In this document: one piece after another, positions 13,583 to 50,110 of the stretch | Numbering within the stretch: position 1 is the first letter of the stretch | Layout of the letters: each line of letters opens with the position of its first letter | Notes under the pieces: model-generated | Databases searched by the model: none | Told to the model about the DNA's origin: nothing | What the model saw: the letters and a program-made list of their open reading frames with translations, nothing else | Translations under genes and position numbers: made by a program | Source of the DNA: Asterias rubens | Taxonomy: Eukaryota | Assembly: GCF_902459465.1 (NCBI RefSeq) | Contig: NC_047074.1 | Location: 1,550,001 to 1,614,000, forward strand | DNA: 64,000 nt | Reading direction: 5' to 3'

Positions 13583-14322
13583 ATGGAGGAAACCTATGAT
13601 GACGAAAGTGGTAAGTAGCTGGTTCAATATTGTGGAATTTCACACTGCTGCCTGCATGTACTCCTTGCGAATTGCGTATCATACAAAAGTTCATTATTTG
13701 CTGTTGGCCGCTGATACTGAACAGAACAGAGCTCAGTCTCAGAGCGCGGCGCAGGGTATTGGTGGTTAAGCGCAAAAGCACAGGAAACCAAGTTGTATGT
13801 CCATCCTCCATGGTCAGAGCTAGTGTCAGGGCCATGAAGATTCAAATCGGTCTGAATTTTGTGATAATTCAAGTAACATATGATGATTATGATTGAACTA
13901 TGCAACTTTTATTTATTTTAATTTAAACTTAATTTAAAGCCATTGGACACTTTCTGAACAGAACAAAAATTAAAAGTTCACAGATTTACAAAATAACTTA
14001 CACTTACACTACAGGGTTTACAGAAGTTAATGGTGAAAGAGTTCCCTTTAAATATTATTCCATGAAATGCTTTACAATACATTAAAAACAACTATCAATT
14101 CTCGATATCGAGAATAATATTAATAACGGATTTATTTATAACACATGTCATGACATCATGACACGGCGAAATGTGCTTAAATTTTCACAGGTTTGTTATT
14201 TTAATTTATATATATTATAAGTTGTGATACAGGTAGTGTGGGCCTTTGGACGGAAATCCGTTGGACAATACTGTTTACCGATGTTGTGCGATTGCTTTGA
14301 TTGGCGCTATATAAATTCCCTC

Positions 14323-14354
<32 letters not shown>

Positions 14355-17300: not shown

Positions 17301-20300
17301 GTCCGTTGTTTTTTTTGTTTTTTGTTTGTTTGTTAGTTCAGACGATCTTCCTGTCAAAGGAACTCTGCAAACTCCTACAAGGCGATATAGAGTCGCTCTT
17401 TCTCAAAGCATTGGTTTAACAATCTTTTTATCTGTTTCTTTCAGGGTTTCGGAGAGGCTGAGTTGGGACAGCCTGTTAAAAAGAAGCGAGCAGGTTCGTT
17501 AAGTATCATTTATTATCCCTCTTTGCTTCTTCCTCATTTTCTTTTTCATTTTCAAAATTCTTCCCAATTTCATAGAGCTGTGCTGACAATGTAAGCAATT
17601 TCATAAAGCCTGTAAGTACAAAAACCTGCTAAGCAAAGGAAAATCTTGCTTAGAAAAAAACAGTTTACCAGCTAAAATTCTATAAGGTTAACATTGTTGC
17701 CACTGGTGCCCTATTCATTTTTTGCTTAGCAAAGAAATTAGTCAATCTGAAAAATCAGTATTTTCTGCTAAACAGCTTTGTGAAACTGGGTTCTGGTTTT
17801 GTATACCCTTTGCAGCTGTTCTATCGAGTGATGATGATGATGACGATGATGGTGTGGAAGATACCATTGAGCAAGAGGGGGTTCCAGATGAGGAGGAGGA
17901 AGAGGAGGGGCAAGGAGAAGGAGAGGATGCTACTCCGGCTGATGACGCGGCGGCGCAGGACTCAGACTCTGACGAAGGGGTTGTTGATGGTGATGATGGG
18001 AAGTCAAAGGGGTGAGTGGAAGCAATTTTTTGGGGGGGGCGTTTTGTTTGCTTTTTAACGCAAGATTGATTGTTGACAATAATCAACAGTTTAAAAAAAA
18101 ATGAGTTGTGAAAAATTGTCTAGCCTGGGATGGAGTTTTGGGTGCCAGATTTTCATGAAGATGTACCATGTTTTCCTAACGGGAATTATAACTTTTTTCC
18201 AGGAGTTTTGTGTCGGACTTTGACCTTATGATGGAACGGAAGAAAGCAGAGAACCGAGCTCACAGAAAACGACGACGCGGCGGTGACATCATCAACGATA
18301 ACGATGACATCATCGTTGCAATGATCAAACAAATGATGGAGGCAGCCAAGGTAAAATCTCGGCCGAATGTCATGAAAATGCTGAAGCAGAAAGTCTGAAT
18401 TCTACCCTCCTCCCCAGGGCTCAATTTTATAGAGCTGCTAAGCACAACAAATTTGCTTAGCATGAAATTTTTGCCTTGATTAAAACAGGATTACCAACCA
18501 AATTTCCACGTGCTTTTCAGGATAAGCAAACAACAGCTGAATACCAGTAACAGGCAATGTGGTTGGTAATCGTGTTTTTATCAGGGAAGAAATTTCATGC
18601 TTAGCAAATTTTTGTGCTAAGCAGCTCTATGAAATTGGGCCCAGGTTAGGGTGAACTTATTTTAGAAACAAAAACTAAAAATTTTTTTTTTTGTCTTTTA
18701 CATCAACAGGAGGACAGACAGTTGAATCAGCGACGGAAAGCTGCCACGAAAAAACTAACCATGCTTCCATCCGTCAAATCACAGCTAAGAAAGTAAGTTG
18801 TTTACCCCTCACCCCTTGGGTGGGAATCGAGCCCACAACCTTTGCATCTAGACCAGTGTCTTACCAACTAGACCACCGAGATTTCCCGGTAGCTGGGGGC
18901 AGTTCGAAATCTTTAGCAGCGGGTACCGCAACGATTTAATAGATGGAAATTTGTATCGAGGATAACGAATATTGTATTTTTTGGTATTTTAATGCTGCGT
19001 TTGTTTTGTCCACAGGCAAGATTTACAGATTGCGTTTCTGGATTGCGGTGTACTGAAAGTAATGAAGGAGTGGTTGATGCCGCTGCCGGATCACAGTCTT
19101 CCAAATCTACACATCAGAGAGACACTACTCAAAATACTCAGGGAGGTAGGAGAAACAAAAAATTAGGCTTGAAGGCACCTTAAGTAACTGTCAAAGACCA
19201 GTATTCTCACTTGTATCCAAACTATGCATAAAATAACAAATCTGTGAAAATTTGGACTCAATCGGGCCTCGAAGTTGCACGAGAATGACAAAAGAAAAAA
19301 CACCCTTGTTGCACAACTTCATTGTGCTTTCAGATGACTAATAAAAGGCTTCAGGCCTGAAGTCTTAATATTTAAGTGAGAATTACCTTTCTCAAAAACT
19401 ACGTTACTTCAAAGGGAGCCGTTTCTCACAATGTTTTTATACTATCAACAGCTCTCGATTGCTCGTTACCAAGTAATTTTTTATGCTAGATATTGTTTTA
19501 AGTAATTACCAATACTGTCCAGTGCTTTCAAGCGTGGTTGGCTATTTCCTCATTTTTTTTCTTCTCAATTCCAAAGTAGCGTGTCTGTTCTATGTAACGA
19601 GTATCATATTTCTATCTTTAACAGTTCCCGCCGATTGATCAGCATATGTTAAAAACCAGCGGTATCGGCAAAGCCGTTATGTGCCTCTTCAGACATCCGA
19701 AGGAGCTTAGACATTGCCGAGATCTAGCTGGGAGATTAATAAGTAAGTAGGATTAACTACAGCCAGAGATTAGGGTTAGATTATCTACCCTCCCTTCCCC
19801 CTTGACTTAAGCCGTGTTCACATTGGACTTTTGTGGGAGGTAAACTAACCGATCTAAACTGAATATGTTTTTATTGAGTGTTTTTTTATGACTGGAAAAA
19901 CACTTTTAATGTTTTCATGATGAAAAAAAAATATCAATCTAAGTTGGCCTTATTTAATCTAATCCAGCTTATTGTACTTGATTACACATCCAACTGCGTA
20001 ATTAATGCCAATAATAGGATGAACAGGAAACAAGAAGAAATGTTCAGTTTTATAAAATGTGGGAGAGCACAAACAATGGGGTAAACCCATGCAATCAGGT
20101 TGGGACTGAAAAACCAATCACCATGCAAGGCTCCGGTCTGAGGTGGGATTCGCACCAGGGTCCACAGAGGTGAAAGGCAGGTAAAGAAACCACTGAGCCA
20201 ACCTTATTCATATATCATGCATGTCTCAGAACAGCTGAATTCCTCTTTTTATATATCTTCATTCATGCCATTCAAACTTGAAAAAAAAACCTGTACATAA

Positions 20301-33560: not shown

Positions 33561-34030
33561 AATCTCTTGTTCTTTGTACACAACCTAATGCATGTAATGA
33601 GAGCTTTTTCTAGCCGGCCAGCGTGAATTTCCAGAACTCTATTTGAAATACACGCCAGCGTTCAGTCACTGTTTTGCCTTAGACGCCCCAAAGCTGTGCG
33701 TTGATTGGTCAGCACGCACGGGCTTTGGCCAATCAAATCATTGATTTATTTATCTGATTTAAATACCCCCAAAAGCTTTCATTCAAACATTGAGGAAAAA
33801 CATTTAGTTAAATTATATTAATAAAACTAACTTATCATTTTAAAAGTATCTATAACTTAGTAAATAAATGTTCTTGTCTCAGCTTGAAATTATTTGGTGG
33901 AAAAAGCGTTGGGAATTTGTGATCCTTTTGTTGTATTAGTGCAGGGCCGTGACCCCTGCGAACTTTTTCGTTATTTACTTTTGTCTTTTCCGATTTCCAG
34001 TTTGTAAACAAACAAAATGGCGTCCGCCTC
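33520..34030. promoter_or_regulatory. Divergent promoter region cyclin B3 / GRL with cell-cycle-type elements
   Basis: ATTGG 33704-33708 and CCAAT 33729-33733; TTTGAA (CHR-like) at 33533 and 33642; YY1-like AAAATGGCG near 34015. Confidence 0.55.
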
Positions 34031-34119
34031 CTTCACACAAAATTGACAAAACCTTGACACTTCGTTCACGCGTTGTCAGAGTTCTTTGTCTTCTGACGTC
34101 TTATGGAGGAGACATTTTG
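34000..34119 (+). other. Probable non-coding first exon of the GRL gene (5' end approximate)
   Basis: Strong donor tttg|GTAAGG at 34120, with acceptors at 35003 and 35020 in front of the coding ATG. The short ATG frames in this exon terminate. Confidence 0.5.
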
Positions 34120-35041
34120 GTAAGGTTTAGTAACAGTTTAACTTGGATGAAGTAAACGTTTTCGGGTTGGCGTTTTTAAAAAGTTATTTGGGTTTTAAAA
34201 CACCAGTTCGGAAAAACGGGAAATGTTGTCGTCGCGCGCGCACAGGCCATTCCCAGCCACACATCGCACTTGTCAAAACTGCGGCTGCATGCATGTGGAG
34301 ACGACAACATTTTAATCACTTCTTGTTTCATATTTAATAACTAATTGATTTTGTTTGTTGTTTGGCAAAATACAACTACAAGAACTAGTAGAAATATTTA
34401 TTAAAAAAAAAAAAAAAGGTAAGCAGGATAATACTAATAGAAATAGAAAAAATGGATAACTTTTATGGCGCCACCACTTTTTCACTCATTTTACAAAAAT
34501 GGCTCTTTGAGGTAAATTAGATACTATATTATCAAATGTAGTTGCGATAACGGGAAATCCCGATAACGTAACCCTCCTCCCGACGGCCTCAGGTCTGGTG
34601 GCCGTCTGGAGGAGGGTTACGTTTTTGTAACTATATCAAATGAAAAAGTGGTGGCGCCAGCCATACGAAAACTTTTCCCCAAAAATTAAGAAAACGGCAA
34701 GAAAGTAATTAATTTGCTGAAGACATTAACTTTACTGTTATAATAACACTTTCAGGGAAAAAAATCTATATCCTGCCACCATACTTTTGATTTGTTATGA
34801 AGAAAAAAAATATATATATATTTTTTTTTCCTTAAAAAAATGTGAAAAAGTTGTGGTTAGGTAATGGCACTTTCTTAAAAAACACACAATTTGAACCCTT
34901 CTAAAAAAATTCTTTTAAACTACATAATAATTACTAGTGTCAACATCAATTTATAAACAATTTTTATATACATTTTTATGAACAATTTATCGCAATTTTT
35001 TAGAGACGTAGTACGTGTAGATGTTAACAACACTCTCTTCC

Positions 35042-38000
35042 ATGAATGGCAGCCGTTCCAGCTCCACATTGAGACTTATGGATGATAGAATGTTTAGCTC
35101 TGACTCCAGCGCCGGAGGCTTTGAAGAGAGGGGAAGAGAGGATGAGTTCCTGAATGATTCTTACACTTCTTCGATTGTTGAGGTGAGGACCAGTTAACAA
35201 AATTAATAATTGATTGAGATATCGCCTAACATCACAGGACCGGAAGGCCACTTCAAGGAGAGGGCTACACTCAACTGATTTTGGCTGTCGACCTGTCAAG
35301 GGGTACGTTGCCACCTACTTCTAGGGCTGAAACAGGGTTACCCGCTTTAACAGTCTGAAGGATGTAGGCATGGGTATCATCCACTAGGAGCCTGTCTGGA
35401 AGTGCACTGTTAAGGGAGGACAGTACATTACACAATGTACAAGACTAAAGTGTGGGGTCTAATGTTGCTGTTGTTGGTTTTGTTTAGATCACAGATATCG
35501 ACAGTCGAGGAAACAACACCCCGTATCACACCACCGTTATCCTGAAGCGATGCAGACAACAAGTATTGATGCCATACTGGAAACTTCTCTTCCTTGTAAG
35601 TTTGGACCTTCCCTCAGCCCCACCGATCTCATCCCTTGTGACCCCTCTCGTCTTATCCATGGAGGTTCTAATTTATTTATTCCGTGTCTTTAAGAGTGCT
35701 CTAGTCTAATGGTTTTAAACACAATATTAAAAATATGGTGTCCAAATAACTCACCTACATAAAAACAAATTCCCCCTGTCAGTTTTCCTTGTGGTTTGTT
35801 ACTTGATAACTGAATTTCTTTTTAACAGCATTTAACTTTCTCATTGCGGCGTTCAGATTGGCTGGCGACCTTTTGGCAGGGATCGTATCAACTACCACTG
35901 GGGCTGGAGGATCCTCAACCTAATCTACCCCGTCCTGCTGGTTGCATTGATGTTCTATGTCTACACTTACAGAATACTATCCTGTCAGAGCAGATATGAC
36001 GTACCAATAGCAATAGTAACCGTAAGTCCCATTTTGCCTTGTTCCTTGTTATGTCTTAACTTAATTCACAGTAAGCCTGTGTCAAAGTCGCGACTATTGA
36101 TTGCTTAGTCAAGTTGCAACTACCGTTTTTCAACTACTCGGTTAATCGTTCCACCGTGACTACTACAACAATAGTTGCGACTACCTGCTTGGTGAACCAT
36201 TTGTGACGCTCACAACTATTCACAACAACATAATTTACTTTATCATCAGACATCAGTGACACAATCCTTCAATTCTTTCAGCGTAAGGTTTACTATCGTG
36301 CCTGCAGCAAACAATATCCATCTGGGGAACTAAGAATAAGTCACACCTAGTGTCGAAGTCGAGCCTTTATGAAGCCCAACTAGTTGAGTAGTTAACTTTA
36401 TTAGTCGCCCAGGCCTAATTCGCAGCCTTTGTTTCTCATCAGACATTTGCTGACGAAACTGTTTTCATTCCAACCCACAGACCACGATTCCAGTGACGAA
36501 CTCCTCCCCAGCTTTAACCACCACCATACCAGCCAACAGCTCCTACGACCTCACCCCCTCGGTGGATACTTACCATCTGTGTACCCACCTGGCCACCTCC
36601 TACATCCTGCCAGACATCCTTCATTTCATGGCATTCCTGCTGGGTTTCTGGTACTTCAGGGTACAAGACAACGAGCAAATGGATGCCCTTATTCAGCAGG
36701 TTGGGTACCAGACTACTTTGTTAATGACTGTCTTTGATGAATTCTCTTGTTTTTTCTTTGTATTTCCATAGTTTCAAAACCATGTGTTTTTGAAGTGATG
36801 CTATTGTCTTTTGTATGTATCTTTTATGGATTTGTTTTGTGAGCAAGTTTTTTTTAAATATTTCTATATTATGTTTTTTTTAATGATAGATAAACTGTGT
36901 CAGCATATGGAGTGCATGCGGCATCTACAACCACACAATAATGATAATGTATAAACACCTGCTAGGCTTAATAGATATTCATAACCACCCCAGACAGTTT
37001 TGCTACTCCTATTGGGGGAAAACGCGTCAAGTGGGGGTGTTTAAACGGATAATGACCAGCTGGAGCTGTTTATAACCGGCTGGCTTCCGCGTGTCGGGCG
37101 CGTGAGTACGCCAATATTATCACGCGGAATGCGCAATTCATAGCTATTAGTAACAGCGCGTAATCTATTTCTAACCTCGCGCGCGTAATCTATTTAAGCC
37201 CGTGCGTGTACACACAACCCCCGCGCATCAAACAGATTCTTCACAAAGTTCTTGAAACCTTGCAGGATCGTTGCCTTGGATAAAGGCCCTTGCCTTCGGC
37301 TCGGGTCGTTATCACTTTGCAACAACCCTGCCAGTTTGAAACGGCCGTTAAAGAACTCGTCACTACCCCTTTATTCCCTCATTTATCTTGCATCAGGGAA
37401 TTTAACTGTTTAATTTGTTCACAGAACTCTGAAAAGTACTTAATATACATCGGTGAATCCAAGTTGTATAAACAAGTCATTATTGGTTCTTCTTTACAGG
37501 CTTTCTTACACGCTACACCGAATCAACATGGAAGCAACACACAGGCCATGATGATAAAGACAATGAAGTAAGAACCATTTTTACTCTGCTTCAAATTCGT
37601 CTCAACCTCCTTATTTCCCAATCCTTTATTTTTAGCAAGTTAATAAGTTGTCGAGTCCGAGCTTTTTTGAGGATCGGGTTCAAATTCACAAAGAGTTGGG
37701 ACTAGTTCTAGGAGATATTAAAAAGTTAAGGTTAGCCCTAAGTTAAGGACACTTGACACTATTGGTAATTGCATCTCAACATATTCATAAAATAACAAAA
37801 CTAAAAGTTTGAGCCCTTTAAGAATCTACTATTATTATTGTTATAATTAAATTACTGTTTGTTTCCCCAAATACAGGTGGATTCTTGTTGGTGGTGCCCT
37901 GTGGGTGTTAGTCGCAATAGGCAAGAATATACTCTTTCTGGTTGCATTTGGACTTGACAACACTGTTTATCCTTTCTTCACTGAGTAAGTTTTTTTCTCA

Positions 38001-41000
38001 TTCTGTTTGAATCACCTTAACCAAGAGCTGTGTATTGAGAGAGAGTTCCAAAGTGGCGGGAACAGTTTTTCTTTGGCCATGTGGTGTGATGGGCGCCATT
38101 TTTTTTTTTTTTTAAACCAATATGCATTCAATCTGGAACCCTAAAGCCCGGTTCATACTTCCTGCGAATGCGAACGCGATACGAATGTTGACGTCACAAA
38201 TTTGCAACGAAATTCGCACTGAGTTGAATCGTGTTCGACTCACTTGCGAATATCGCTGCGAAAGGAGGGTTGTGACGTCAAATTCATGTCAAATTCGCTT
38301 CGTATTCGCATTCGCAGGAAGTATGAACCGGGCTTTATTGTGTACATTTGTTCAAAACTCACGAGGACAAACCCTGAATAAAAGGCGTTGTATACCTTTG
38401 TTTTTTTGGAACTCTTTGATTGCTGTTTTGTCCACCCAGGAAAAGTACATAATTTTCAGTCTAAAAAAGCGTTACTCCTTGCGGTAATCTTTCCAATCTT
38501 TTGGGGAAAAAAGCGATACAATTTTCCATAACCGCAGTACTTCAAAGTGAAATGGCTCTCAAAATGCATTGTACTATCCAAAGCTGCTGCACTTCTTACC
38601 ACCTAAGGTTTTATTGCCACTACCTTTAAAGGCAGTGGACACTATTGGTAATTGTCAAAGACTAGCCTTCACAGTTTGTGTATCTCAACGTATGCATAAA
38701 ATAACAAACCTATGAAAATTTGAGCTCAATCGGTCATCGAACTTGCGAGATAATAATGAAAGAAAAAAACACCCTTGTCACACAAAGTTGTGTGCGTTCA
38801 GATGGTTGATTTCGAGACCTCAAGTTCTAAATCTGAGGTCTCGAAATCAAATTCGTGGAAAATTACTTCTTTCTCGAAAACTATGGCACTTCAGAGGGAG
38901 TCGTTTCTCACAATGTTTTATACCATCAACCTCTCCCCATTACTCGTCACCAAGAAAGGTTTATGCTAATAATTATTTTGAGTAATTACCAATAGTGTGC
39001 ACTGCCTTTAAGTCATTTAAAAATTTGTTCAGCCATCTATTTTACCAACTTCTTCCTAACTAAGGATTGATCTTAGGACTTAGGATTTAGTTCCGTATTA
39101 CTAGACGTTAAAGCCATTGGACCCTTTCGGTTCAGAAAAAAAAGAAAAAAGTTCACAGATTTACAAATAACTTACAGGGTTTACAGAAGGCAATGGTGAA
39201 AGATATCTCTTGAAATATTATTCCACAAAATGCTTTACTTTTTGAGAAAACAGCAAAACAATATAAATTCTCGTTAACGAGAATTACGGATTTATTTTAA
39301 ATACATGTCATGATACGGCGAAACGCGCGGAAACAAGGGTTGGTTTTTCCGTTGTTTTCTCCCGACTCCCTTTAACCTTCAATCTCCAATCTTACCCTCA
39401 ACAGAGATGCTTGGAACGGAGTGAATATTGCTCTACTCTGCCTCAACATGTTCGGTTGTCTCATCTACAACTTGATCAACACGGCCGTCGTCGTCAACTA
39501 CACTGTGCAATGTGAAACCATCATCTGCTTTGTTCGTAGCATTCGGGAACGCCTGCTGGAGAAGACTAGTGACCTGCGAATGATCATGCATGTGAGTTGT
39601 GTCTCGCACTCTTGTGTCTCTGATCAGTAGAGAATGGGTTCAAATCCAGGTCTAGACACTGAATTCAATTCAATTCACGTTATTATCACCAATGGCAAAT
39701 TCACTTTGGCCTTTATACATCAAATTCACAAAATTTACATAAAAGTCTTTACGTAATTCTTTAAAGGCACTGGACATCTTTGGTAATTGTCAATGATCAG
39801 TAGGATCCAGTCTCACTCTCGTCAATTTGTATTTGTTCAGCCAAAAATGTCTTGATTTTTCAACGAGTGTGTCTTTATATTTTTAACTCAGGATATTTTA
39901 AAAGTCTGGCAGGCCACGCAGCAGCTAAATGGACCAATGGCGAAGATGATGTCGTTGTGTGCCTTTAACTTCGCTTCGCTGGTCATAGTAGGTAGGTAAC
40001 TTTCAATAGCTTTCATTATTCTCTTGCAAACTCGATGACCAATTGAGTTCAAATTTTCACAGGTTTGTTATTTGATGCATATGTTGGGATACACCAAGTG
40101 AGATTACTGTTCTTTGAAAATTACAAAAGGTATCCAGTGCCTTAACTTGCTTGTTTTCTTCATTTTTAAGACAGTTTATTTAGATTTCCCCTTAATTTGG
40201 TTGCTTTAACTTTTTTACCAGGTCTCTGCTAATTGCTGATTCATTACAACTTGTGTTCAATCTCACAAATAAAATGCTTTTTACTTTGTGTCTGTTTTGC
40301 TCCTGAATAAGGTCTTCAACTGTTTCATGTCTGTTAAAAACTCATTTGTTTGCAGCTTCTAATTTGTAATGTGTTTACTTGTTCTTGTATCCTTCACTCA
40401 TTGTATATTATTTTATTGTTCTCTTTTTATTCCCTTAGAGGCTTTTGCATTAGGCAGTTTTGCAACTTTATTATTATTATTATGCTTCCCTGTTGGCTTG
40501 ACTGATTACATTCTACAACTACAAGTTACAGCACTGTAACTTGTAGTTGTAGAAGATATAATTCTGATTTGCCTGCCTTATTAGTGTTCTTGACAGAATA
40601 TTTACTACTGATATTAATATAATTTTTTTACTTTTTTTGTTATTATAATTACTATGCTGATATTACTAATCTGTTTGTTTGTTTAGCTTTCATTATTTCG
40701 TGCCTTTGTTATTTGTTATTTATTAAACCACAGCTGTTTTATGTATGTAGTTTTTAGGCCTAATTACAACCTTACCCTATTGCTGTTATTTATTTTACCA
40801 AGCCATAACCCAACTGCTATTTCATGACCTTATTTGTCATTCATTTCATATATTGTACGCCCTATGTTTACAGGTATAAGCCTACTGCTGTTTCATCGTA
40901 ACGTACAAACCACGCCGTTAGTGGTCACATATCGTATGTGCTATCTACTCGTCTGGCTGACTATTCTGGTGTTTCCTTTTGTACAGGTAAAACGTTTGAG

Positions 41001-42234
41001 CAAACCAGGGCTCGATTTCACAAAGCACAAAGATTTATCTCAAGATGAGTTGACAAGATTACTGTAGTTGCATCCCCTCAAGGTGATCCCCTGGCTGATG
41101 CCTCCCAGGTTTTATCGTAAACTTGAGTGTGATCTCTTGTCACACGGCAGTTAACGGTTGTATGTCTTCTGACTAGCAATCTCGAACAAAGATATTGACA
41201 AAAAAGGGAGACTGACTAGTTAGTAGTAAACATAAACATCCACAGGTTGTTGGTTCAAATCATGCTCTAGTAAACTCTCCACTGTTCAACCCAAAATCAG
41301 TTAAGATTGAAACACAGTTAAGATCAAATTTAACTCTTTGTGAAGTCAATTTTAATATTCCTTGAAGTTATGTTTTTTTTTTTTGTGATTCCACGACAGA
41401 ACAAAAGTTTGCTTTTTTGTAGAACCAAACTTTGTACTCTACAAAATTGCAAACCATTGTTCTTCTGCTAGTTGTATTAATTCATAACTCATATTTATGA
41501 AGGGTTAATTTTAAATTTTCTATTGCATGTTTCTCATCAAGTCAATTTGTTCTGGTGCTTTAACAGGCTGCTAGACTGAGTGCCACGTACAATAAGTTTG
41601 AGCAAGCAGCATTGGAGATGCGGGTGTTCGGGTACCAGACCGCCTCGCCACAGGAGTTGGACTCCTTTCTGCAGTTTGTGTCGACAGCCAAGTGCAAGGT
41701 ATACCTACTCATTTCAAGTTTACCAGTCTCCTGATGATAACAAGACCAATTAAGAACTCACTCTGAAGCAGTGAAAATAATAATGTAAAGTCCACTCGAC
41801 CCGCGAACCAAAAAGTAGGAGTCCTGGCGGATTTCCTACCCTCCAACCAACTAATACGTGGGCCAGTTCTTTTCAGAACTGAGAAGTCTTCTGTAGAAAA
41901 TCTACTCCGCAGTAGTAGCATACATGTTATATAGCAAAACATTTCTCAAAAGAACATAATCTACCCAGCAAGTAGATCTACACATGGTGTCACCACAAAC
42001 TTAATGAACATTAATACCTCCGATGCAACGCCTCAAATCACGGTAAGTTTAAAATATGTAGTTATAGCTTCAAACATTAGAGGATGTTTGTTTTTTATTT
42101 CAATATTACAGGTTCGACTTCTGTTCATTCCCGTCATGAATGCCAATGTTTACGGGACGCTCCTCTTAGTGTCGTTCCTACTGCTGATCCTGGTTCAGAC
42201 TGGAGTTATCAAAGGTCCGTCAAACTACCTCTAG
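35042..42234 (+). CDS. Seven-transmembrane gustatory-receptor-like (GRL/7TMIC superfamily) candidate, ~487 aa (alternative ATG 35021); exons 35042-35182, 35488-35595, 35857-36021, 36481-36699, 37500-37567, 37877-37984, 39405-39591, 39892-39991, 40874-40986, 41567-41698, 42112-42234
   Basis: Eleven exons join in frame (1464 nt) through canonical GT-AG sites, giving seven hydrophobic segments. The C-terminus ELDSFLQFVSTAKCKVRLLFIPV...GTLLLVSFLLLILVQT resembles the GR TM7 TYhhhhhQF region. The gene model is well supported; the family call is moderate. Confidence 0.75.
38626..39011. mobile_element. TTAA-flanked MITE family A (Kolobok-type); also 19169-19531, 22433-22816, 29197-29592, 56968-57353
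   Basis: TTAA-AGGCAGTGGACACTATTGGTAATT...AATTACCAATAGTGT(G/C)CACTGCCT-TTAA, with a shared ~385-bp body. Confidence 0.85.
41725..42040 (+). mobile_element. Diverged copy of the hammerhead-headed element, stem II deleted
   Basis: gtctc-CTGATGA, then a jump to agaccaatt.agaact; shared ttctttcagaactgagaagtct and caagtagat.tacacatggtgt blocks. Confidence 0.6.
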
Positions 42235-42364
42235 TGGCTGTGAAGCAAGAAAGACGCTCCGTACGTGAGTCACCCATTAAAAACAGACCCGAGTTTGTCC
42301 TTGAGTTCTGGTTGGTACTCACCCATTTTACAAAGAGCTGGGCCTAATTTTATTGCTCTGCATA

Positions 42365-42777
42365 CTTCAATTAATCAATCATCAATCGTAAATTTATAAC
42401 GCACTAATCCAACAGTCGTTGCTCATAGCGCCGTACAGTAAAAAAAAGAAGTTGAGATTTAAGGAGAGTTTTGAAATTTGAAGTAGATTGCCTGATGTTT
42501 TCAGGAAGATGATTCCACATCCTTGGTGCTGCGATAGAAAAGGAACGATCCCCCCAACTGTGTTTAGTTCTTTGAATGTGAAAAATTGAAATGTGGGAAC
42601 AGGAATACAGATTTCTAACAGGTTCTTTGATTGACAATAAGTCAATGAGATATGAAGGGGCTGAGGCATTGAGGCAGCAAAACACAAGCAGGAGGATCTT
42701 AAATTGAGAGCGTGACTCTTCAGGATTGGTGTCACATGATCACATTTTTGGCACATACTACCAAACGAGCTGCCCAA
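42365..42777 (-). mobile_element. L2/CR1-group LINE 3' remnant (frameshifted ORF2 C-terminus plus tail)
   Basis: DHVTPILKS...APSYLIDLL...GDRSFSIAAPRMWNHLPENIR...FKTLLK across two frames, followed by a gatt-rich tail. Confidence 0.8.
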
Positions 42778-45620
42778 TTCTGAAGTTTTTGGATGGTCAT
42801 ATTTGCTTACTGTGCAAACGGCAAATTTCTACAAAACCTGTGTAAGCGAAGAGTGCCTAGAAACATGGAGTACGTACATAAACAAGCAAAACTTTCCTGC
42901 TACTTTTGAATTACGTGGGACTTAAGTTCCTTACTTCCAGAAGTGCTGATGCTAAGCTTATGGTAAGCAGAGCCTTTAAATTGGGCCCAGTTCTCAACAT
43001 AATCTTTCTGTTTGAGGTGTCACTGCCTGTGAGTTTACTGACAAAAATATCAACAAAATTTTACAGATTCTATGACATGAAGTATTGGAAAAAATGTGTT
43101 TTAAAGCAGCTTTGAATGATACAAATCAACCAAACTTAAGAAATTGGATAAGAAAAGGTAGGACTTTCTCTCTGCTCTTCAGCATTTTGATTATTTGAGG
43201 CTTGTGAGTCAGAATCACTATGCCTTGGGGAAGTGGGTTCCAGGCAGGATGGAATGGTTATAAAACAACCACTTTACTGATAACGGCTGAAGAGTCACAG
43301 TAAAACCGGTCAGTAGGATTAAGAAATTTTAGTAAGTGGGAAATTTATGGATGATGATGACAGTGAAGGAATCTTCACGCGACTCCAGTACTAACTTCCC
43401 ACAAATTAACTTTTTTATTTTTGTTAATTAATTTTGGTGACCAAAAAAACAGATATTAGTTTTTTTGGTATGAACCGGCAAAACTATTGCAAGACTACTT
43501 TATTATTCTTGTTTGATATTGGATATCATTACTGAGGCTGAACCATTGTTTACTCTTTAGTTTATTTTCTTTGAGAGCACAGATAAGGACTAAATAAGTC
43601 CCAAACTGTCTGAACAATTGTTCAAAGTTTTGTGTTTGATAGATGAAAGTTGGTTAATTAAAAACAGTACTCCTTGTGAAACCAGCTTTTATAAAAAGAA
43701 AAGATACAAACTTGTAACACTGAAATACAAACTTTTCTTTTTGAAATATTGGTGTCTTGGAGCATTATTTTGGAAATTCTTGATGGCTTCAGATTATCGG
43801 CAAACTGGAGCTTGAATAGCGCCCTCATTGTGTGAAACTTTGGAAAATTTATATTTCCTATAGTTATAATTCATTGACTTTCCAAAAACTGACCAATGCG
43901 TTGGTCTCTAAGAGAGACAGTATTATTGCAGTATTATTGTCAAAAGATGTTCTTCCATTTTAATAATTTCATTAATTATTCATTAATCTTAAATGTGAAT
44001 AGTCAACAAGCTTGTCAGTGCTATCAAAAATATATTTTGCAAAAACAGATCCTGTTTGTTGCACAATTTTGATGTATACTTAGATCCATATAGATAAATA
44101 TATTAATTTTTGTGATGTTTCCAAGTACCAATAATTTTTTATAACAAGTCAAAAGAAAGACTTAAATCAACTCGGACGGAGCCATTTTTAAGGCAGAGAC
44201 TATGTTTCAAAAATGGTTTGATACAAATAAATTATTCCTTTTGAAAATTAAATTTTCAAAATATATGACTTAAATTTAATATAAAACCACATTATAACAA
44301 TTTAAAGTTACTCAGCATTATATATTTTATCGTAATTAAGCATACAGTTAAGAGTATACTTCAGTTCTTTTACTTTTCAACTACTATCTATAAAGTCTAA
44401 CAAACAAGAATTGTTAATTTTGAAATGTTTTTCATTATACTTTTGAAAAGAAGTTTTGAATAATTTATTTTGATTTACAAAAGGAGTTTTATTTCTTTGA
44501 TTTTCTGTAAAATGTTTTGTAAACCGAAAACTAGCCTTTATATGCAATATATTTACATTTAAAAGTATTTAAATAGTGTGCTCTAACGGACATTTTAGAA
44601 TGTGAAATCCATAGTTTTAAATCATTTTTTACTTCATCCCGACAAAACAATGTCTCTCTGGGCACAGCCCATCAAGTTCATCAATTAATTCTTAGGGCCA
44701 TTTCGAAACCACTGCTTCAGCTTTGGTTTTCTGTTTCAAAGTTCCCTGTGCAATTTTTTAAATCGTGAATACAGATTTTAAGCACACATTAAAGGGCACC
44801 AGACGAAATTGAGTGAGAAATAAAGGCACCTCCGAAACCTCGTCTTGGGTTCGGGTTCTTAGCTCCGTTTTGATATTTGGAACTCACTGCAAAAATTAAT
44901 GTCCACTGTTCCGAAATCCAAGTGGGATCGCGAGCTGGAGCCCAAGTCGATGTTTGGGGACGAGGTACCGTCCCTGTGGGGACGAAACGGCCTTGCTCCC
45001 TGAGAACGAGGAGTCGCTCGTTACGGTTTAAACAGCATTTTCCAACACTTGTAAAATGAAATAAAAAGTGGCAAAGAGTAAAAACTTTGATGTTCGTCTT
45101 TTTATTGTTGAGGATAGGAGGATTATCTTTGTTGGGCCTCACGAGTTAAACATGTTGGTTCCGCAGAGCACTGTTATATTGATGTGTCCTCAATTTCTTT
45201 TTTACACGCGCGTGAATCATAAGGTGTGAACGGCGGGTACCCGGGAAGCACTTTGTTGTCATCCTCATGTTCATCTTTTTTAAGGATTCTTCACATATTT
45301 TGAATCGATTTCTAAGAACAAAGATTCACTAACGAAAAGCACTACGACAGTCACAATTTGATGTACCGAAAACAAAATTCCACCCGGGGAACTGGGAAAC
45401 TGTTTGGATACGCGCGAAACTTGAAGCGTGATATCGCCGCGTGTGAGCTAGCGCGGAACGCCGAAGCCGGAGTCCCCAAAAAGAATGCGTGCATTTCAGA
45501 AACCCTGCATCCAGTCTAGTATATACTACACCATAAATGCTTATCGAGACACCGTTTATGACTTGAAATAACAAGATTTTGAAAGAAAAGTAATTGTTTG
45601 AAGTGTAAGAGACACAGAGA

Positions 45621-47461
45621 ATGGGGTTTGGTCAGTCGAAGAAAAAGGAGAGTCTTGAAAGTGTGCAACTAGACAGAGGAAGCAGATCGGTAAGCCTGAG
45701 TTTAAATCTTAAATAAACAAAATTATAGGTCTATAACTTTCTCATGGTCATGTCACACAAGGCAATTTTATTTTACAAGCAGCCAGCTCCAGACAAACAA
45801 AGAAGAGAATCCATTTACATTTGATTTTTTTACAAACTGTTTTTTGGGGGATCGTTACTCGTAAGACATTGTTTGAAAAAAATGCTCTCGACTTGTGCAA
45901 AATTTGTCTTGGACCATGCCCGTTTTAAAATAATTTTAATATAATAAAAAAAAAAGGAATTTTTGTTAGAAATGTTTGACATTGACTATTCTGAATGGTC
46001 CTCCTTATGTCTTAGGCCTATAATGGTTTTAAAACTTCCCCAACTTTGTCCCCCTCAAAACAGGAAAGGGGGTCCATACATAGCTCCAATTTATCGGACG
46101 ATTCTGAGTGGTTTGTATCACCACCTACTTCACTCGTCAACGGCTTCACTAACTTCTTTGAGTTCCCAAAGAGGAGTCGTGCAATCGCCAAGCCCACGGT
46201 AGACTACAACCAAGCTCATCAAGAGAATGTGAAACAGTGTCTCTGTCACACAAAGACGGTAAGTTGTCATGAAAAAACTCGGGGCTAAACTGCGGGGTTA
46301 AATTTCAGCTGCTTCAGGCAGGATAAATTGCTTAAAAAATGTCAAACTTCGTGGGTTCAATCCGGCAAAGCTATTTCAGTGATTTCACTAGAGTATTTTT
46401 TATACTGAATCACAATTAGTATGTGCAACTTTTCCTCATCTGAACAAACAAGTTAATAAAAACCCGTACAAACGACCCCAACAAACCAATTTTTTCTGTC
46501 TCTACAGGTACCACGTCCGAGCAACGGTAAACTTGAAAGCAAAGCAACTATAACTGTGCAAGAAGAAACTGCCAAGCATTCTTCAAATGGTGAATCATCA
46601 ACCCACTTTCCGAAAGAGTTGAAAAATCAAGGCATCAAAGATGTTAAGAAAACCAACCAGTTCAGCAACCACCAAGGGGAGCCTCAACCAAGGCAGAACG
46701 GTGGGAATTTTAGTGATTCAGGCACCCCAAGGTTTGGCAAGAGTGACAAACCACGTTCCGCCACATTGTCCATTCTGGAGTTACCTGGCAACCAGAGGCA
46801 GTATTTCAATGAGAGGCGCCAAGCTGTTCAGGCAAAGTTAAGTAGGCAACCGCAGAAAGGAACGCAACCACAAAAACAGGGGCAGAGTTTGCAGCAGCAA
46901 CAGCAGCAGCCTAAACATCTACAAACAATACCGCAGCAAAGCATGCAGCAGCAAACTCAACCCAACCATCAAGAGAAAGTTGGTCAGCACACTCAGCAAG
47001 TTCACCAACAGCAAGAGCAGCAACAGCATCATAATGCAGTCTCCACGTCTTATGACGAGGGAGCTCAACGTCAAACGATTGACAAGCAAAAACCATCACA
47101 GCAACAGAAAAAACAACAAAAGCAGGAACCAAACCTGCAGCAGTCAATGCACCAGTTGTCCAAGGCAACTGCTCACCTACAGCAACTAAAGAAGCAAGTA
47201 GAACAGAATGTGAGTGAACAGCAGAAACTGCAACTAAAAACTGGAGCGAAACCCCAACAGCACATTGACGTGTCAGATCAACAGCAGCAGCCGCAACATA
47301 ACCTAAAACAACAACAAACAAAGCTATCCCAGTGTTCAACACAGCAAAATCACCACCAAGACAAGAAGCTGCCAACTGCACTTTTACAGCAGCAAGTTCC
47401 GCCTCAGGACAACACGCCCCTGATTAAATCACAAGCCCAGCAGAAACAACAGCAGCCGAGT

Positions 47462-47500
<39 letters not shown>

Positions 47501-50110
47501 GAGAAGCTGCAAGAAGAGAAGCCAAAAAAGAAAGGTAAACATCAGGAAAAACTACCAACAAAACAACCAGTTGATCAACAGCGAGTAGATGACAACCTTT
47601 CCAAGAAAACCAAGAAACTGACGAAAAAAGAGCAGCGCGCTCTTGACTTGAAACATAAACAATGTGGTGATCTGCACCAACCAAACGAGAAGCAGTTACA
47701 ACAACAGAGCCAGGAGCTGAATCACTCGGCACTCCCAGAGCAGAATGCACGACAGGGCAAAGAGGAACCCAATCAGCAGCCAACAAGTATCAACGTCCAG
47801 GAGACAGCTAAACCTCTGCCACATCAGCGAACAAACCAACCACATGACACTCAGGAGCAAGAACAGCATCCCCAAAAAGTTGCCGTAACTGTCAGATTGA
47901 CATACGAAGCAGACAACACGCCGGCCAAACATGTGAAGCAACATGTAGTCGAGGATACACTAAAAGGAAAACCCATACCATTGATGGCTATCACCTTTCC
48001 AAAACATGGAGCAAACTTCACTCTTCGGCCTTCAAAGCTGAAGGCTACATTGGAAAGCAAGAAACAAGTTAACCCAACAACCTCGGGTGCCTCAAAAGAC
48101 CTAGTTGGGGAACCAACACATCTCTCTGTTGAAACAGTGGACACGTCAGACCACAGCCCTGACAATGCTTCCACAAAACAATCTGAAACGTCGAAAAAAA
48201 TCACAAAACGCCCGCTGACGCCATTTTTCCCACGGAAGAAGAAATCCCAAGAAAATTTTCCTACCAGCTCTACCGATGATTCACAAGAACATGATCTAAA
48301 ACAGAATGGCAATGAGGAGAAGCAGCACCAGCCCGAAATCCAAAAGCAACACTACAAGGAAAACGAACAACAGCAAAATCAACAAGGTCAGACACAACGA
48401 CAGCTGCAGAATCAACCAGAACATCAACAACAACTACCATCTCAGCAGCGGGGAAAACAAGAAGGGCCACAAATCATAACTCCGTTCGTTTTTCAAGGCA
48501 GCAAGGAACGTCCCAAGCTGAAGCCTGTTCACAGACTTCCCGACAAGTGCTCTTCTGAGCTCTCTACCAGCACAGCAGCGGTGCTTCAAGCTCAATTTAC
48601 ACGGAACCAGCCGTCCAAGTCCCCCAAAACGGCCAGGAAGCAGAAGCCAATTCAAGGTGACGCGAAGATGGAAAAGTTTAAACTGATTCAGAAGAATGAC
48701 TCCCCGGCTTCGACGACGACGACGGAGAAGTTGGACTGTTGTGCCATGAATTTGAATGACCCATCGGTGACCGTGACACACTGTGTTGCTCCCTGGGCCA
48801 TCGTCTGTAACAAAATGCCTGACCAGACGATTTCCTCAGATACACCCGTAGTTGGGAAGAAGGTTAAGTGCAAAACGTCTAAAACTGGCAAAACGAGTAA
48901 AGTGAGTCATCGGGAGGGTCATGGATTTTTCTCCAAGATATTTGGCAAGAAGACCACTACTGAAAAAAAGAAGAAACCCAAACACGTATGCTCTAAGACA
49001 GTATCAGAAGAAATGGAGACAATAACAAAACACATGGAGGACCTGAGATTGTCTTCTTCGACTTCAATTCACAAGGACGACGTCACGGAAGGCAAGACCG
49101 ACCGTCAGATTGCAGCAATGACTCCCTCGCCACTAGAGCAGGAACTCGGTCAAGACTCGGAGAGTTCTACCGAGGAGAGTGACAGCGCTACTGATCTTGA
49201 ACCTCCAAGTTGCCTGGAAGCCTGGGAGATAGCCGAAGACGTCGTCGAGAAGGCCCTGTTCCTCCTCCCAGTTCCAACTGCCGGCAAGTACGTCGTACCG
49301 GACAGCCCGTTCGAGCCCGAGTTCGTCAAAAGGCTCGTTGCAGACGCACTGGAGGCAAAGAGGGGACTGAAGAAGGTCAAAGAGGACCTGAAGCTCATGG
49401 AGAAGTTCCGAGATGCCCTCTTAAAGTTCTTCGAGGACAAGGAGATCAGTGATGTCATCCCACCCTGCAATCACCCTCCGGGAACGAACCAGTGTAACCT
49501 TCAACCCGTCATTCAACCGCTTGTAGATATACTTCGGCAAGTTCTTCAAGAACCTAAAGTTGCTAATGACCAGGCTAAGAAGGGACCCGAGACTCAGCAG
49601 ATAGAGACCAAACGAGAGGCAGAGACACAACAGCCACGTCCGAGGAGGTACATCAAGATCAGAAGGAAGTTGAAAACAGGACAGGTTCGTGATAAAAAAG
49701 AGAGCATTTTCTCAGTAAATGTTGTTGAAATTCAAAATACAATACCGTAATCTGGCCTGAGTTGTGACGAAAGTTTACAAAATTCAGAACCACAGTCAAA
49801 GAATCGGATGATATTTTAAACGAACTTGTAATATTGTATCCTTCCACATCGTTTCAAATCTCACTTTATATTGAAACAAATAACCAGGAATCTTCTGGCT
49901 ATTTTCCAGGCACCCACTCAGCTACTGATTCGCTTCTGCCAGGCCTGCGGGGATACCAAGCAGCCAGACGGTAGGAAGCTGATGAGCTGTGGCCGCTGCA
50001 AGGACGTGGTGTACTGCAGCAAGGAGTGCCAAGGTGTCGACTGGATCACCCACAAATTCACCTGCAGAGGGGGCGACAGGAGAGGGTTCTGCAAGCACCA
50101 CGGAATGTAG
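45621..50110 (+). CDS. Q-rich, largely disordered protein with N-terminal myristoylation motif and C-terminal MYND zinc finger, ~1229 aa; exons 45621-45689, 46016-46258, 46508-49684, 49910-50110
   Basis: A 3.2-kb open exon (ORF track 46556-49750). All junctions are phase 0 (tcg|gtaagc, acg|gtaagt, cag|gttcgt). The last exon encodes CQAC..CGRC...YCSKECQ..DW..HK..C. The start reads MGFGQSKKK. Confidence 0.8.

What the first reader, a model, noticed from the sequence alone, without database searches (positions are those of the whole stretch)
35042..42234. Hidden 11-exon seven-TM gene with gustatory/odorant-receptor superfamily (7TMIC) hallmarks
Seen: the gene is scarcely visible in the ORF track but assembles in frame to ~487 aa. 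It has an amphipathic pre-TM segment (VLMPYWKLLFLIGWRP), seven hydrophobic helices, a Thr/Pro/Asn-rich loop after TM1 with NSS sequons, long helical TM4-5 and TM6-7 connectors, and a terminal ELDSFLQFV...VRLLFIPV...SFLLLILVQT. The last two introns are phase 0. Known: insect GRs/ORs are tetrameric ligand-gated channels with a TM7 TYhhhhhQF motif and conserved C-terminal phase-0 introns, and divergent GRLs exist in non-insect animals with mostly unknown ligands. Inference: an uncharacterised ligand-gated ion channel with a variant pore motif (SF.....QT).
Basis: partly seen in the sequence, partly recalled or inferred. Interest (0 to 1): 0.8.

Follow-up and report, generated by a model that had tools for sequence, protein, structure and literature searches.

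The report
Starfish GrlHz, a known GR-like protein
The 11-exon gene is real and encodes a seven-helix membrane protein with the insect taste/odorant-receptor channel fold, but it is the already published starfish copy of the conserved single-copy GrlHz gene, whose function is still unknown.

Summary
Spliced transcript contigs from four runs support the chain.

- An AlphaFold2 model (pTM 0.71) has seven TM helices, long cytoplasmic extensions of TM4-6 and a split TM7a/7b.
- In the PDB it matches only insect GR/OR/Orco structures: VIA Z 18-26 for the eight representatives (seven at 24-26), next best 7.7; the top 23 Foldseek hits all have probability 1.0.
- Charge distribution and the NSS sequons give an N-in/C-out topology.

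It is not new. This exact protein is in the GrlHz (GrlHolozoa, Drosophila CG3831) sequence set and trees of Benton & Himmel 2023 (eLife, PMC9998090).

It is not a canonical GR/GRL:
- there is no Pfam 7tm_7 match;
- it is single copy, 33-69% identical across phyla, and most conserved on the cytoplasmic side.

A four-copy model of residues 272-494 passed its controls (0.49 against 0.00), with contacts in the TM5/TM6/TM7a "anchor". Channel activity and ligand remain untested inference.

The parts
35021..35182 (+). Coding exon 1 (aa 1-54). Encodes the disordered N-terminus. The following intron is phase 0.
   Evidence: Exact match to P0035. An in-frame stop lies directly upstream. Orthologues start at the MNG/MNA position.
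35488..35595 (+). Exon 2 (aa 55-90). Encodes the amphipathic pre-TM helix (CRQQVLMPYWKLLFL).
   Evidence: profile hit at 35413-35601; helix 67-90.
35857..36021 (+). Exon 3 (aa 91-145). Encodes the invariant IGWR motif and TM1. The donor is GTAAGT at 36022, not the weaker GTACCA at 36001.
   Evidence: profile hit at 35851-36021.
36481..36699 (+). Exon 4 (aa 146-218). Encodes the T/P/N-rich extracellular loop with two NSS sequons, TM2 and the FRVQDNEQ motif.
   Evidence: Transcript contigs lie on 36481-36696 in X1, X3 and X4.
37500..37567 (+). Exon 5 (68 nt, aa 219-241). Encodes intracellular loop 1. It is easy to miss in the ORF track.
   Evidence: The transcripts require 176 nt between exons 4 and 7. 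Three ambiguous letters (CAG) at the joint fit this acceptor. Confirmed by orthologues and P0035.
37877..37984 (+). Exon 6 (aa 241-277). Encodes TM3.
   Evidence: (transcript depth at 37937).
39405..39591 (+). Exon 7 (aa 277-339). Encodes TM4 and its cytoplasmic extension (VNYTVQCE...EK).
   Evidence: Transcript contigs in all four runs. It is a 100% self-hit and has no paralogue in the genome.
39892..39991 (+). Exon 8 (aa 340-372). Encodes the TM5 cytoplasmic extension (LNGP) and the start of TM5.
   Evidence: The 213 nt between exons 7 and 10 in the transcripts equals 100 + 113 nt.
40874..40986 (+). Exon 9 (aa 372-410). Encodes the end of TM5 and TM6. The following intron is phase 0.
   Evidence: (variant at 40947 seen at transcript depth; four ambiguous letters ACAG at the joint).
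41567..41698 (+). Exon 10 (aa 411-454). Encodes the TM6 cytoplasmic extension (AARL, RVFGY) and TM7a (ELDSFLQFV). The following intron is phase 0.
   Evidence: Transcript contigs in all four runs.
42112..42234 (+). Exon 11 (aa 455-494 plus the TAG stop). Encodes the hinge with invariant P461 and TM7b (F476-x6-Q483-T484). The 3' UTR continues beyond 42299.
   Evidence: Transcript contigs run on from 42110 to 42299 and beyond; the X1 contig has about 1 kb more.

Best explanation
This is the Asterias rubens orthologue of GrlHz (GrlHolozoa, Drosophila CG3831). GrlHz is a single-copy, strongly conserved Class-A member of the seven-transmembrane ion channel (7TMIC) superfamily that also holds insect gustatory and odorant receptors.

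Shown here: the exon chain, its transcription and splicing, the 7TMIC fold with N-in topology and a split TM7a/7b, the single copy number, and the wide animal distribution.

Inferred (about 50%): it assembles as a homotetramer through a cytoplasmic anchor made of the TM5/TM6 extensions and TM7a, and TM7b lines a central cation pore gated near the conserved L481/Q483/T484 end.

The cytoplasmic face is the most conserved part, the extracellular loops are the least conserved, and the gene has not expanded. Its role is therefore more likely a conserved physiological one than environmental chemoreception. Any ligand is unknown.
For: Identity. The 11 exons translate exactly to P0035, which is XP_033637999.1 / LOC117298778. 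That accession and sequence are in the file 'GrlHz-Dmel-CG3831.fasta' and in the GrlHz trees of PMC9998090.

Fold. The AF2 model has pTM 0.71, and helices 280-329, 334-382, 387-431, 438-450 and 462-483. The top 23 Foldseek hits in the PDB are all GR/OR/Orco, with probability 1.0 and TM by target up to 0.73; the next hit has probability 0.18. VIA-align gives Z 18.2-26.1 for the eight OR/GR/Orco representatives, seven of them at Z 24.0-26.1 over 345-358 residues at 3.7-4.0 A; the next best is Z 7.7. AFDB cluster hits at E 1e-13 to 1e-16 are arthropod proteins of 18-23% identity, well ahead of canonical GRs at 1e-4 to 1e-6.

Topology. There are 27 K+R residues in the predicted inside segments and 3 in the outside ones. 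Both NSS sequons lie in the TM1-2 loop.

Copy number and spread. The gene is single copy. Orthologues are 33-69% identical in echinoderms, amphioxus, a nemertean and gastropods; spider orthologues are 29-32% identical, and other chelicerates also carry it.

Conservation. It peaks in IL1, the TM4 extension, TM7a and the hinge, and is lowest in the extracellular loops.

Tetramer. Four copies of residues 272-494 scored 0.49, against 0.00 for the best of 3 controls. That mark was reached by 21 of 30 proteins solved as pairs of one chain and by 0 of 23 solved as single chains. The runs agree in at least 71% of contacts, and the partner's pLDDT is at least 69. The confident contacts are at 335-349, 423-430 and 438-451, which overlap the invariant V430 and D442/S443/F444/F447.
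Against: - No current, ligand or oligomer has been measured for any GrlHz; PMC9998090 itself says a completely different activity cannot be excluded.
- The tetramer score may come from the model's memory of solved OR/GR tetramers, and the job (four copies, eukaryote) is unlike the tool's calibration.
- There is no sequence-level link to GR/OR by Pfam or by a profile search of PDB sequences.
- The GR pore motif TYhhhhhQF is absent, and Q483 is not invariant: crinoids and one other member lack it.
- TM7b has the lowest model confidence of the core (pLDDT about 50-66).
- My in-session sequence searches reached chelicerates but not insects, so the link to Drosophila CG3831 rests on the paper's data.
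Confidence: 0.85

Rival explanations
1. It is a canonical chemosensory GR-like receptor (a GRL in Robertson's sense): an externally ligand-gated taste or odour receptor of the starfish.
For: It has the same fold as the sugar receptors Gr43a, Gr64a and BmGr9. UniProt's automatic rules name some relatives 'Gustatory receptor'. The two C-terminal introns are phase 0.
Against: - No member matches Pfam 7tm_7.
- The TM7 motif is F-x6-QT, not TY-x5-QF.
- The last intron lies 20 codons before S475/F476, against six codons before the motif in GRs (PMC2680840).
- The gene is single copy and highly conserved across phyla, the opposite of expanding, fast-evolving chemoreceptors.
- The extracellular loops are the least conserved part.
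- Drosophila GrlHz is broadly expressed and non-neuronal (PMC9998090).
Confidence: 0.07
2. The 7TMIC fold is kept but the protein is not an ion channel. It could be, for example, a membrane scaffold, a lipid- or solute-handling protein, or a regulator that works through its conserved cytoplasmic face.
For: The cytoplasmic segments (IL1, TM4 extension, TM7a) are the most conserved and TM7b is only moderately so. Some GrlHz homologues carry an N-terminal WD40 propeller, which suggests protein partners (PMC9998090). The authors leave a non-channel activity open.
Against: Every 7TMIC with a measured function or a solved structure is a tetrameric cation channel (PDB titles; established knowledge of Orco, MhOR5 and BmGr9). 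The tetramer model passed its controls with an Orco-like anchor interface. L481 and T484, at the outer end of TM7b, are nearly invariant.
Confidence: 0.25
3. The gene model is an artefact or a pseudogene: a chance chain of short ORFs.
For: The exons are short (68-219 nt) and barely visible among 134 small ORFs in the region. My own first chain contained one false exon.
Against: Spliced transcript contigs occur in four runs. The translation is identical to a RefSeq protein. Full-length orthologues exist in several phyla. The fold is confident.
Confidence: 0.01

Closest known systems
GrlHz / GrlHolozoa (Drosophila melanogaster CG3831, UniProt Q9W1W8), from Benton & Himmel 2023 eLife (PMC9998090); placed in Class-A Euk7TMIC by Himmel et al. 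2023 (bioRxiv 10.1101/2023.08.30.555482)
   Same: It is the same family. This very protein (XP_033637999.1) is in their GrlHz sequence file and trees, next to the Acanthaster, Patiria, Anneissia and Branchiostoma orthologues. It shares the motifs P..QAAR, RVxxF/Y, (E/D)LDxxLLF and AKLFxxP, lacks any Pfam signature, has the 7TMIC fold and is low copy.
   Different: Nothing at the family level. The starfish protein has no WD40 N-terminal domain, which only some GrlHz homologues carry. Its tissue expression is unknown, whereas fly GrlHz is broadly expressed and non-neuronal.
Insect gustatory receptors with solved structures (DmGr43a 8jm9, DmGr64a 8jme, BmGr9 8vc1/8uvu)
   Same: The seven-TM fold matches at Z 24-25 over about 345-358 residues. 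Topology is N-in, TM4-6 have long extensions, TM7 is split into 7a and 7b, and a tetramer with an anchor-domain interface is predicted.
   Different: Sequence identity is only 7-13%. There is no 7tm_7 match and no TYhhhhhQF motif. The last intron is not at the GR position. It is a single conserved gene rather than an expanded family.
Insect odorant receptors and Orco (6c70, MhOR5 7lic, AgamOR28 8v3d, AaegOR10 8v02)
   Same: These give the best structural scores (Z 25-26; TM by target 0.73 to 7lic). The interface residues fall in the segments that I take, from my own knowledge of Orco, to correspond to its anchor domain (TM5, TM6, TM7a).
   Different: There is no sequence similarity. No co-receptor partner is known. 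ORs are specific to insects, while this family spans animals.
PHTF (Class-B 7TMIC)
   Same: It belongs to the same superfamily fold according to the literature.
   Different: A. rubens has a separate PHTF2 gene (XP_033640557.1, in the same paper's supplement). No PHTF appeared among my fold matches.

Membership tests
7TMIC superfamily (fold level) | Seven TM helices with an intracellular N-terminus, the inverse of GPCR topology | tested here: met
   Seven hydrophobic helices. K+R count is 27 inside against 3 outside, and both NxS sequons lie in the TM1-2 loop.
7TMIC superfamily (fold level) | Tertiary fold superposes on the Orco/OR/GR cryo-EM structures and on nothing else | tested here: met
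   VIA Z 18.2-26.1 for the eight OR/GR/Orco representatives (seven at 24.0-26.1), next best 7.7. The top 23 Foldseek hits are all GR/OR/Orco.
7TMIC superfamily (fold level) | Long cytoplasmic extensions of TM4-TM6 and a split TM7a/TM7b | tested here: met
   Helices 280-329, 334-382, 387-431, 438-450 (7a) and 462-483 (7b), with the invariant hinge residue P461.
7TMIC superfamily (fold level) | Homotetramer held by the anchor domain, with TM7b lining the pore | tested here: inconclusive
   The four-copy model of 272-494 scored 0.49 against 0.00 for the best control, with contacts at 335-349, 423-430 and 438-451. It may come from memory of solved relatives. No confident TM7b contacts were listed.
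7TMIC superfamily (fold level) | Ligand-gated cation conductance | not testable with these tools
   Needs electrophysiology. None has been reported for any GrlHz.
GrlHz (GrlHolozoa) | Sequence homology to D. melanogaster CG3831 and placement in the GrlHz clade | tested here: met
   By literature look-up: XP_033637999.1 is in 'GrlHz-Dmel-CG3831.fasta' and in the GrlHz trees together with CG3831. My own searches link it at E 1e-67 or better to chelicerate members of the same lineages (spiders, Centruroides, ticks) that appear in those trees, but they did not reach insects.
GrlHz (GrlHolozoa) | Low copy number and wide distribution in animals, including a chordate | tested here: met
   Single locus in the 418-Mb genome. 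Orthologues occur in echinoderms, Branchiostoma, a nemertean, gastropods and chelicerates.
GrlHz (GrlHolozoa) | No recognisable GR/OR sequence signature | tested here: met
   None of 23 members hits 7tm_7, 7tm_6 or Trehalose_recp at E up to 10. The profile finds no PDB sequence at E up to 10.
Canonical Gr/GRL (Pfam 7tm_7, PF08395) | Match to PF08395 | tested here: not met
   The genome-wide scan with PF08395 was uninformative because its controls did not ring.
Canonical Gr/GRL (Pfam 7tm_7, PF08395) | TM7 motif TYhhhhhQF | tested here: not met
   The sequence is S475-F476, six residues, then Q483-T484. The family consensus is F-x6-QT, and Q is not invariant.
Canonical Gr/GRL (Pfam 7tm_7, PF08395) | [quoted passage not shown] | tested here: inconclusive
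   The last intron is phase 0 but lies 20 codons before S475, at the TM7a/7b hinge (criterion). A residue-level structural alignment, which would settle whether the positions are homologous, was not available.

The most novel reading that the evidence does not exclude
GrlHz is not a chemoreceptor at all. It would be a housekeeping tetrameric channel controlled from the cytoplasmic side through its nearly invariant anchor motifs (FRIQDNEQ, VNY..QCE, QAAR, RVFGY, LDSF, IP). It would also be the only Class-A 7TMIC retained in a chordate (amphioxus), with the starfish offering an experimentally tractable deuterostome in which to find its function.
Probability: 0.3. Interest if true: 0.6.

Novelty: already known. 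Interest (0 to 1): 0.25.

Why it matters
The reading from raw sequence was right: a deuterostome genome carries a relative of the insect taste and odorant receptor channels. However, the gene is annotated in RefSeq, and this exact protein is already listed as a GrlHz homologue by Benton & Himmel (2023). The classification therefore adds nothing new.

What stays open, and matters, is the function of GrlHz. It is a single-copy 7TMIC conserved from unicellular holozoans to amphioxus, with no known ligand, current or phenotype.

The small additions made here are: a transcript-checked exon map, the pattern of cytoplasmic-side conservation, an anchor-domain tetramer prediction that passed its controls, and the observation that the GR TM7 motif register and last-intron position are not reproduced.

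Tried and rejected
- First exon chain. It used weak GTACCA donors at 36001 and 36705 and a hydrophobic 'exon' at 40439-40535. Transcript spacing and the orthologues showed that this exon is not used, that exon 3 ends at 36021 and exon 4 at 36699, and that a 68-nt exon was missing.
- Alternative 68-nt exon at 36844-36911. Rejected in favour of 37500-37567, which has the better splice sites, fits the three ambiguous letters at the joint, and matches the orthologue sequence.
- Pfam on single exon translations and on 23 full-length members. Only noise was found, with E of 0.03 or worse.
- Family profile against PDB sequences. No hit at E up to 10.
- PF08395 scan of the starfish genome. No hit, but the control genomes did not ring either, so it says nothing.
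- Rfam over 34000-43500. Only a sub-threshold mir-3036 match (29.7 bits against a gathering score of 70), taken as chance.
- Last protein search, with a spider homologue. It reached spiders, scorpion, horseshoe crab, tick and an annelid, but not insects.
- Literature. No paper in the library reports a function for CG3831/GrlHz. The Acanthaster chemoreceptor paper's 'GRL101' is an unrelated LGR-type GPCR.
Full report
**The sequence**

The region lies in a 39-40% GC animal genome and shows only short ORFs. I chained candidate exons by hand into an in-frame 489-aa product. I then tested that chain against transcripts.

Four runs hold spliced contigs that lie on 36481-36696, 39405-39591, 41563-41696 and 42110-42299. 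The gaps between these pieces in the contigs are 179 nt and 209 nt. Those gaps contradicted my first chain in two places.
- Between exons 4 and 7 the transcript holds 176 nt. That equals the 108-nt exon at 37877-37984 plus a 68-nt exon.
- Between 39591 and 41567 it holds only 213 nt. That equals 39892-39991 plus 40874-40986, so the hydrophobic ORF at 40439-40535 is not an exon.

A search for 68-nt exons gave 37500-37567 as the best candidate.

**Identity**

A whole-library HMMER search with the 62-aa exon-7 peptide returned full-length proteins of 414-570 aa. A word-indexed search with the best of these named them as uncharacterised proteins of Acanthaster planci, Patiria miniata, Asterias rubens, Branchiostoma, Lineus and several gastropods.

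The A. rubens entry (P0035, LOC117298778, 494 aa) is identical to the translation of eleven exons: 35021-35182, 35488-35595, 35857-36021, 36481-36699, 37500-37567, 37877-37984, 39405-39591, 39892-39991, 40874-40986, 41567-41698 and 42112-42234. The window is therefore Asterias rubens. The genome size of 417.6 Mb fits.

The two valvatid orthologues also start at that position.

**Family**

Twenty-three full-length homologues align over the whole length at 28-69% identity to the starfish protein. There are 36 invariant positions, including:
- IGWR before TM1;
- P189, L192 and H193 in TM2;
- R205 and E210 after TM2;
- N308, Q312 and C313 in the TM4 extension;
- E329 and K330;
- P407, Q410, A411 and R413 at the end of TM6;
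- V430, F431 and G432;
- D442, S443, F444 and F447 in TM7a;
- P461 in the hinge.

The family profile finds only this locus in the starfish genome, matching 10 of the 11 exons. Exon 7 has no paralogue. Later searches added spiders, scorpion, horseshoe crab, tick and an annelid.

No member matches any Pfam family, including 7tm_7 and 7tm_6. The profile finds no PDB sequence at E up to 10.

**Fold**

AlphaFold2 was run on the family alignment without templates. It gave pTM 0.71 with a confident core and disordered regions at 1-64 and 137-177. The helices are 67-90, 105-132, 182-208, 210-222, 230-265, 280-329, 334-382, 387-431, 438-450 and 462-483. That amounts to a pre-TM helix, seven TM helices, long cytoplasmic extensions of TM4-6, and a split TM7a/7b.

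The structure searches agree.
- Foldseek against the PDB: the first 23 hits are exclusively insect GRs, ORs and Orco, all with probability 1.0 and TM by target up to 0.73. The score then collapses to probability 0.18 and TM 0.1.
- The Foldseek-independent VIA search: the only eight representatives with Z of 8 or more are OR/GR/Orco chains at Z 18.2-26.1. Seven of them score Z 24.0-26.1 over 345-358 residues at 3.7-4.0 A. The next best hit has Z 7.7.
- Swiss-Prot models: Drosophila GRs and ORs, plus C. elegans gur-3, lite-1 and egl-47.
- AFDB clusters: the best hits (E 1e-13 to 1e-16, 18-23% identity) are arthropod proteins, several auto-named 'Gustatory receptor'.

Topology follows the positive-inside rule. 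There are 27 K+R residues in the N-terminus, IL1, IL2 and IL3, against 3 in the other segments. Both NSS sequons sit in the TM1-2 loop. This gives N-in/C-out, as in 7TMICs.

**What is already known**

Benton & Himmel 2023 (PMC9998090) named Drosophila CG3831 'GrlHolozoa' (GrlHz). They describe it as a 7TMIC with homologues across Holozoa, including Branchiostoma and Capsaspora, broad non-neuronal expression in the fly, and no known function.

[quoted passage not shown] It groups with the Acanthaster, Patiria, Anneissia and Branchiostoma orthologues. Himmel et al. 2023 place GrlHz in Class-A Euk7TMICs. No later paper in the library gives a function. The classification is therefore published.

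**Mechanism**

Conservation is highest in TM2, IL1, the TM4 extension, TM7a and the hinge. It is lowest in the extracellular loops.

Four copies of residues 272-494 were folded together. The score was 0.49, against 0.00 for the best of 3 controls. That mark was reached by 21 of 30 proteins solved as pairs of one chain and by 0 of 23 solved as single chains. The runs agree in at least 71% of contacts, and the partner's pLDDT is at least 69.

The confident contacts are at 335-349 (TM5 extension), 423-430 (TM6 extension) and 438-451 (TM7a). From my own knowledge of Orco, these are the segments that build its anchor domain. They also overlap the invariant V430 and D442/S443/F444/F447.

The tool warns that such a pass may be memory of solved relatives and that four copies differ from its calibration. 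I therefore treat the tetrameric channel as the most likely mechanism (about 50%) but as unproven. A non-channel role through the conserved cytoplasmic face remains open (about 25%).

**Differences from canonical GRs**

- The TM7b sequence is S475-F476-LLLILV-Q483-T484. Six residues, not five, separate F and Q. The family consensus is F-x6-QT, and Q is missing in crinoids and one other member.
- In GRs a phase-0 intron lies six codons before TYhhhhhQF (PMC2680840). Here the last phase-0 intron lies 20 codons before S475, at the TM7a/7b hinge. Phase is shared, but by this register position is not.
- It is a single, slowly evolving gene rather than an expanded family.

**Verdict**

The gene is an already published GrlHz orthologue and is not a new kind of receptor. 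The ligand-gated channel function is still inference.

Noticed in passing
window 38629-38762 and 40010-40143: A 134-nt inverted repeat pair, 82% complementary, lies in introns 6 and 8 and brackets exons 7 and 8. Both arms belong to a dispersed element that is hugely over-represented in the RNA-type contigs: summed depth reaches about 4 million at 38700-38899 and about 0.7 million at 39900-40099. Contigs also join the two arms on opposite strands (38670/40081). Such pairs can favour back-splicing, but that was not tested.
   Followed up: partly
window 38142-38337: A MITE-like unit lies in intron 6. It has 45-nt terminal inverted repeats, 91% complementary and 106 nt apart, and many contigs are laid on it.
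   Followed up: no
window 35021 vs 35042: RefSeq starts the protein at the ATG at 35021 (MLTTLSSMNG...). The Acanthaster and Patiria orthologues start at the position of the second ATG, 35042 (MNG/MNA).
   Followed up: partly
window 14001-18000 and 46001-50000: There are strong strand-composition anomalies: GC skew of +0.19 to +0.24 at 14-18 kb, and AT skew of +0.27 to +0.37 at 46-50 kb.
   Followed up: no
protein P0043 (Batillaria) and P0057 (Oedothorax); AFDB clusters A0A1D2NA85 and T1KKF4: UniProt or UniRef names some GrlHz-family members 'Gustatory receptor', although none of the 23 aligned family members (P0043 among them) reaches any Pfam GR model in my scan. P0057 and the AFDB entries were not scanned. 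The public naming of this family is inconsistent.
   Followed up: partly
AFDB clusters A0A7J7BKK7 (1138 aa, match at 662-1133) and A0A7R9GC88 (988 aa): The closest structural relatives include much longer proteins in which the 7TM part is only one portion. This is consistent with the WD40-bearing GrlHz subset described in PMC9998090, or with fused gene models.
   Followed up: no
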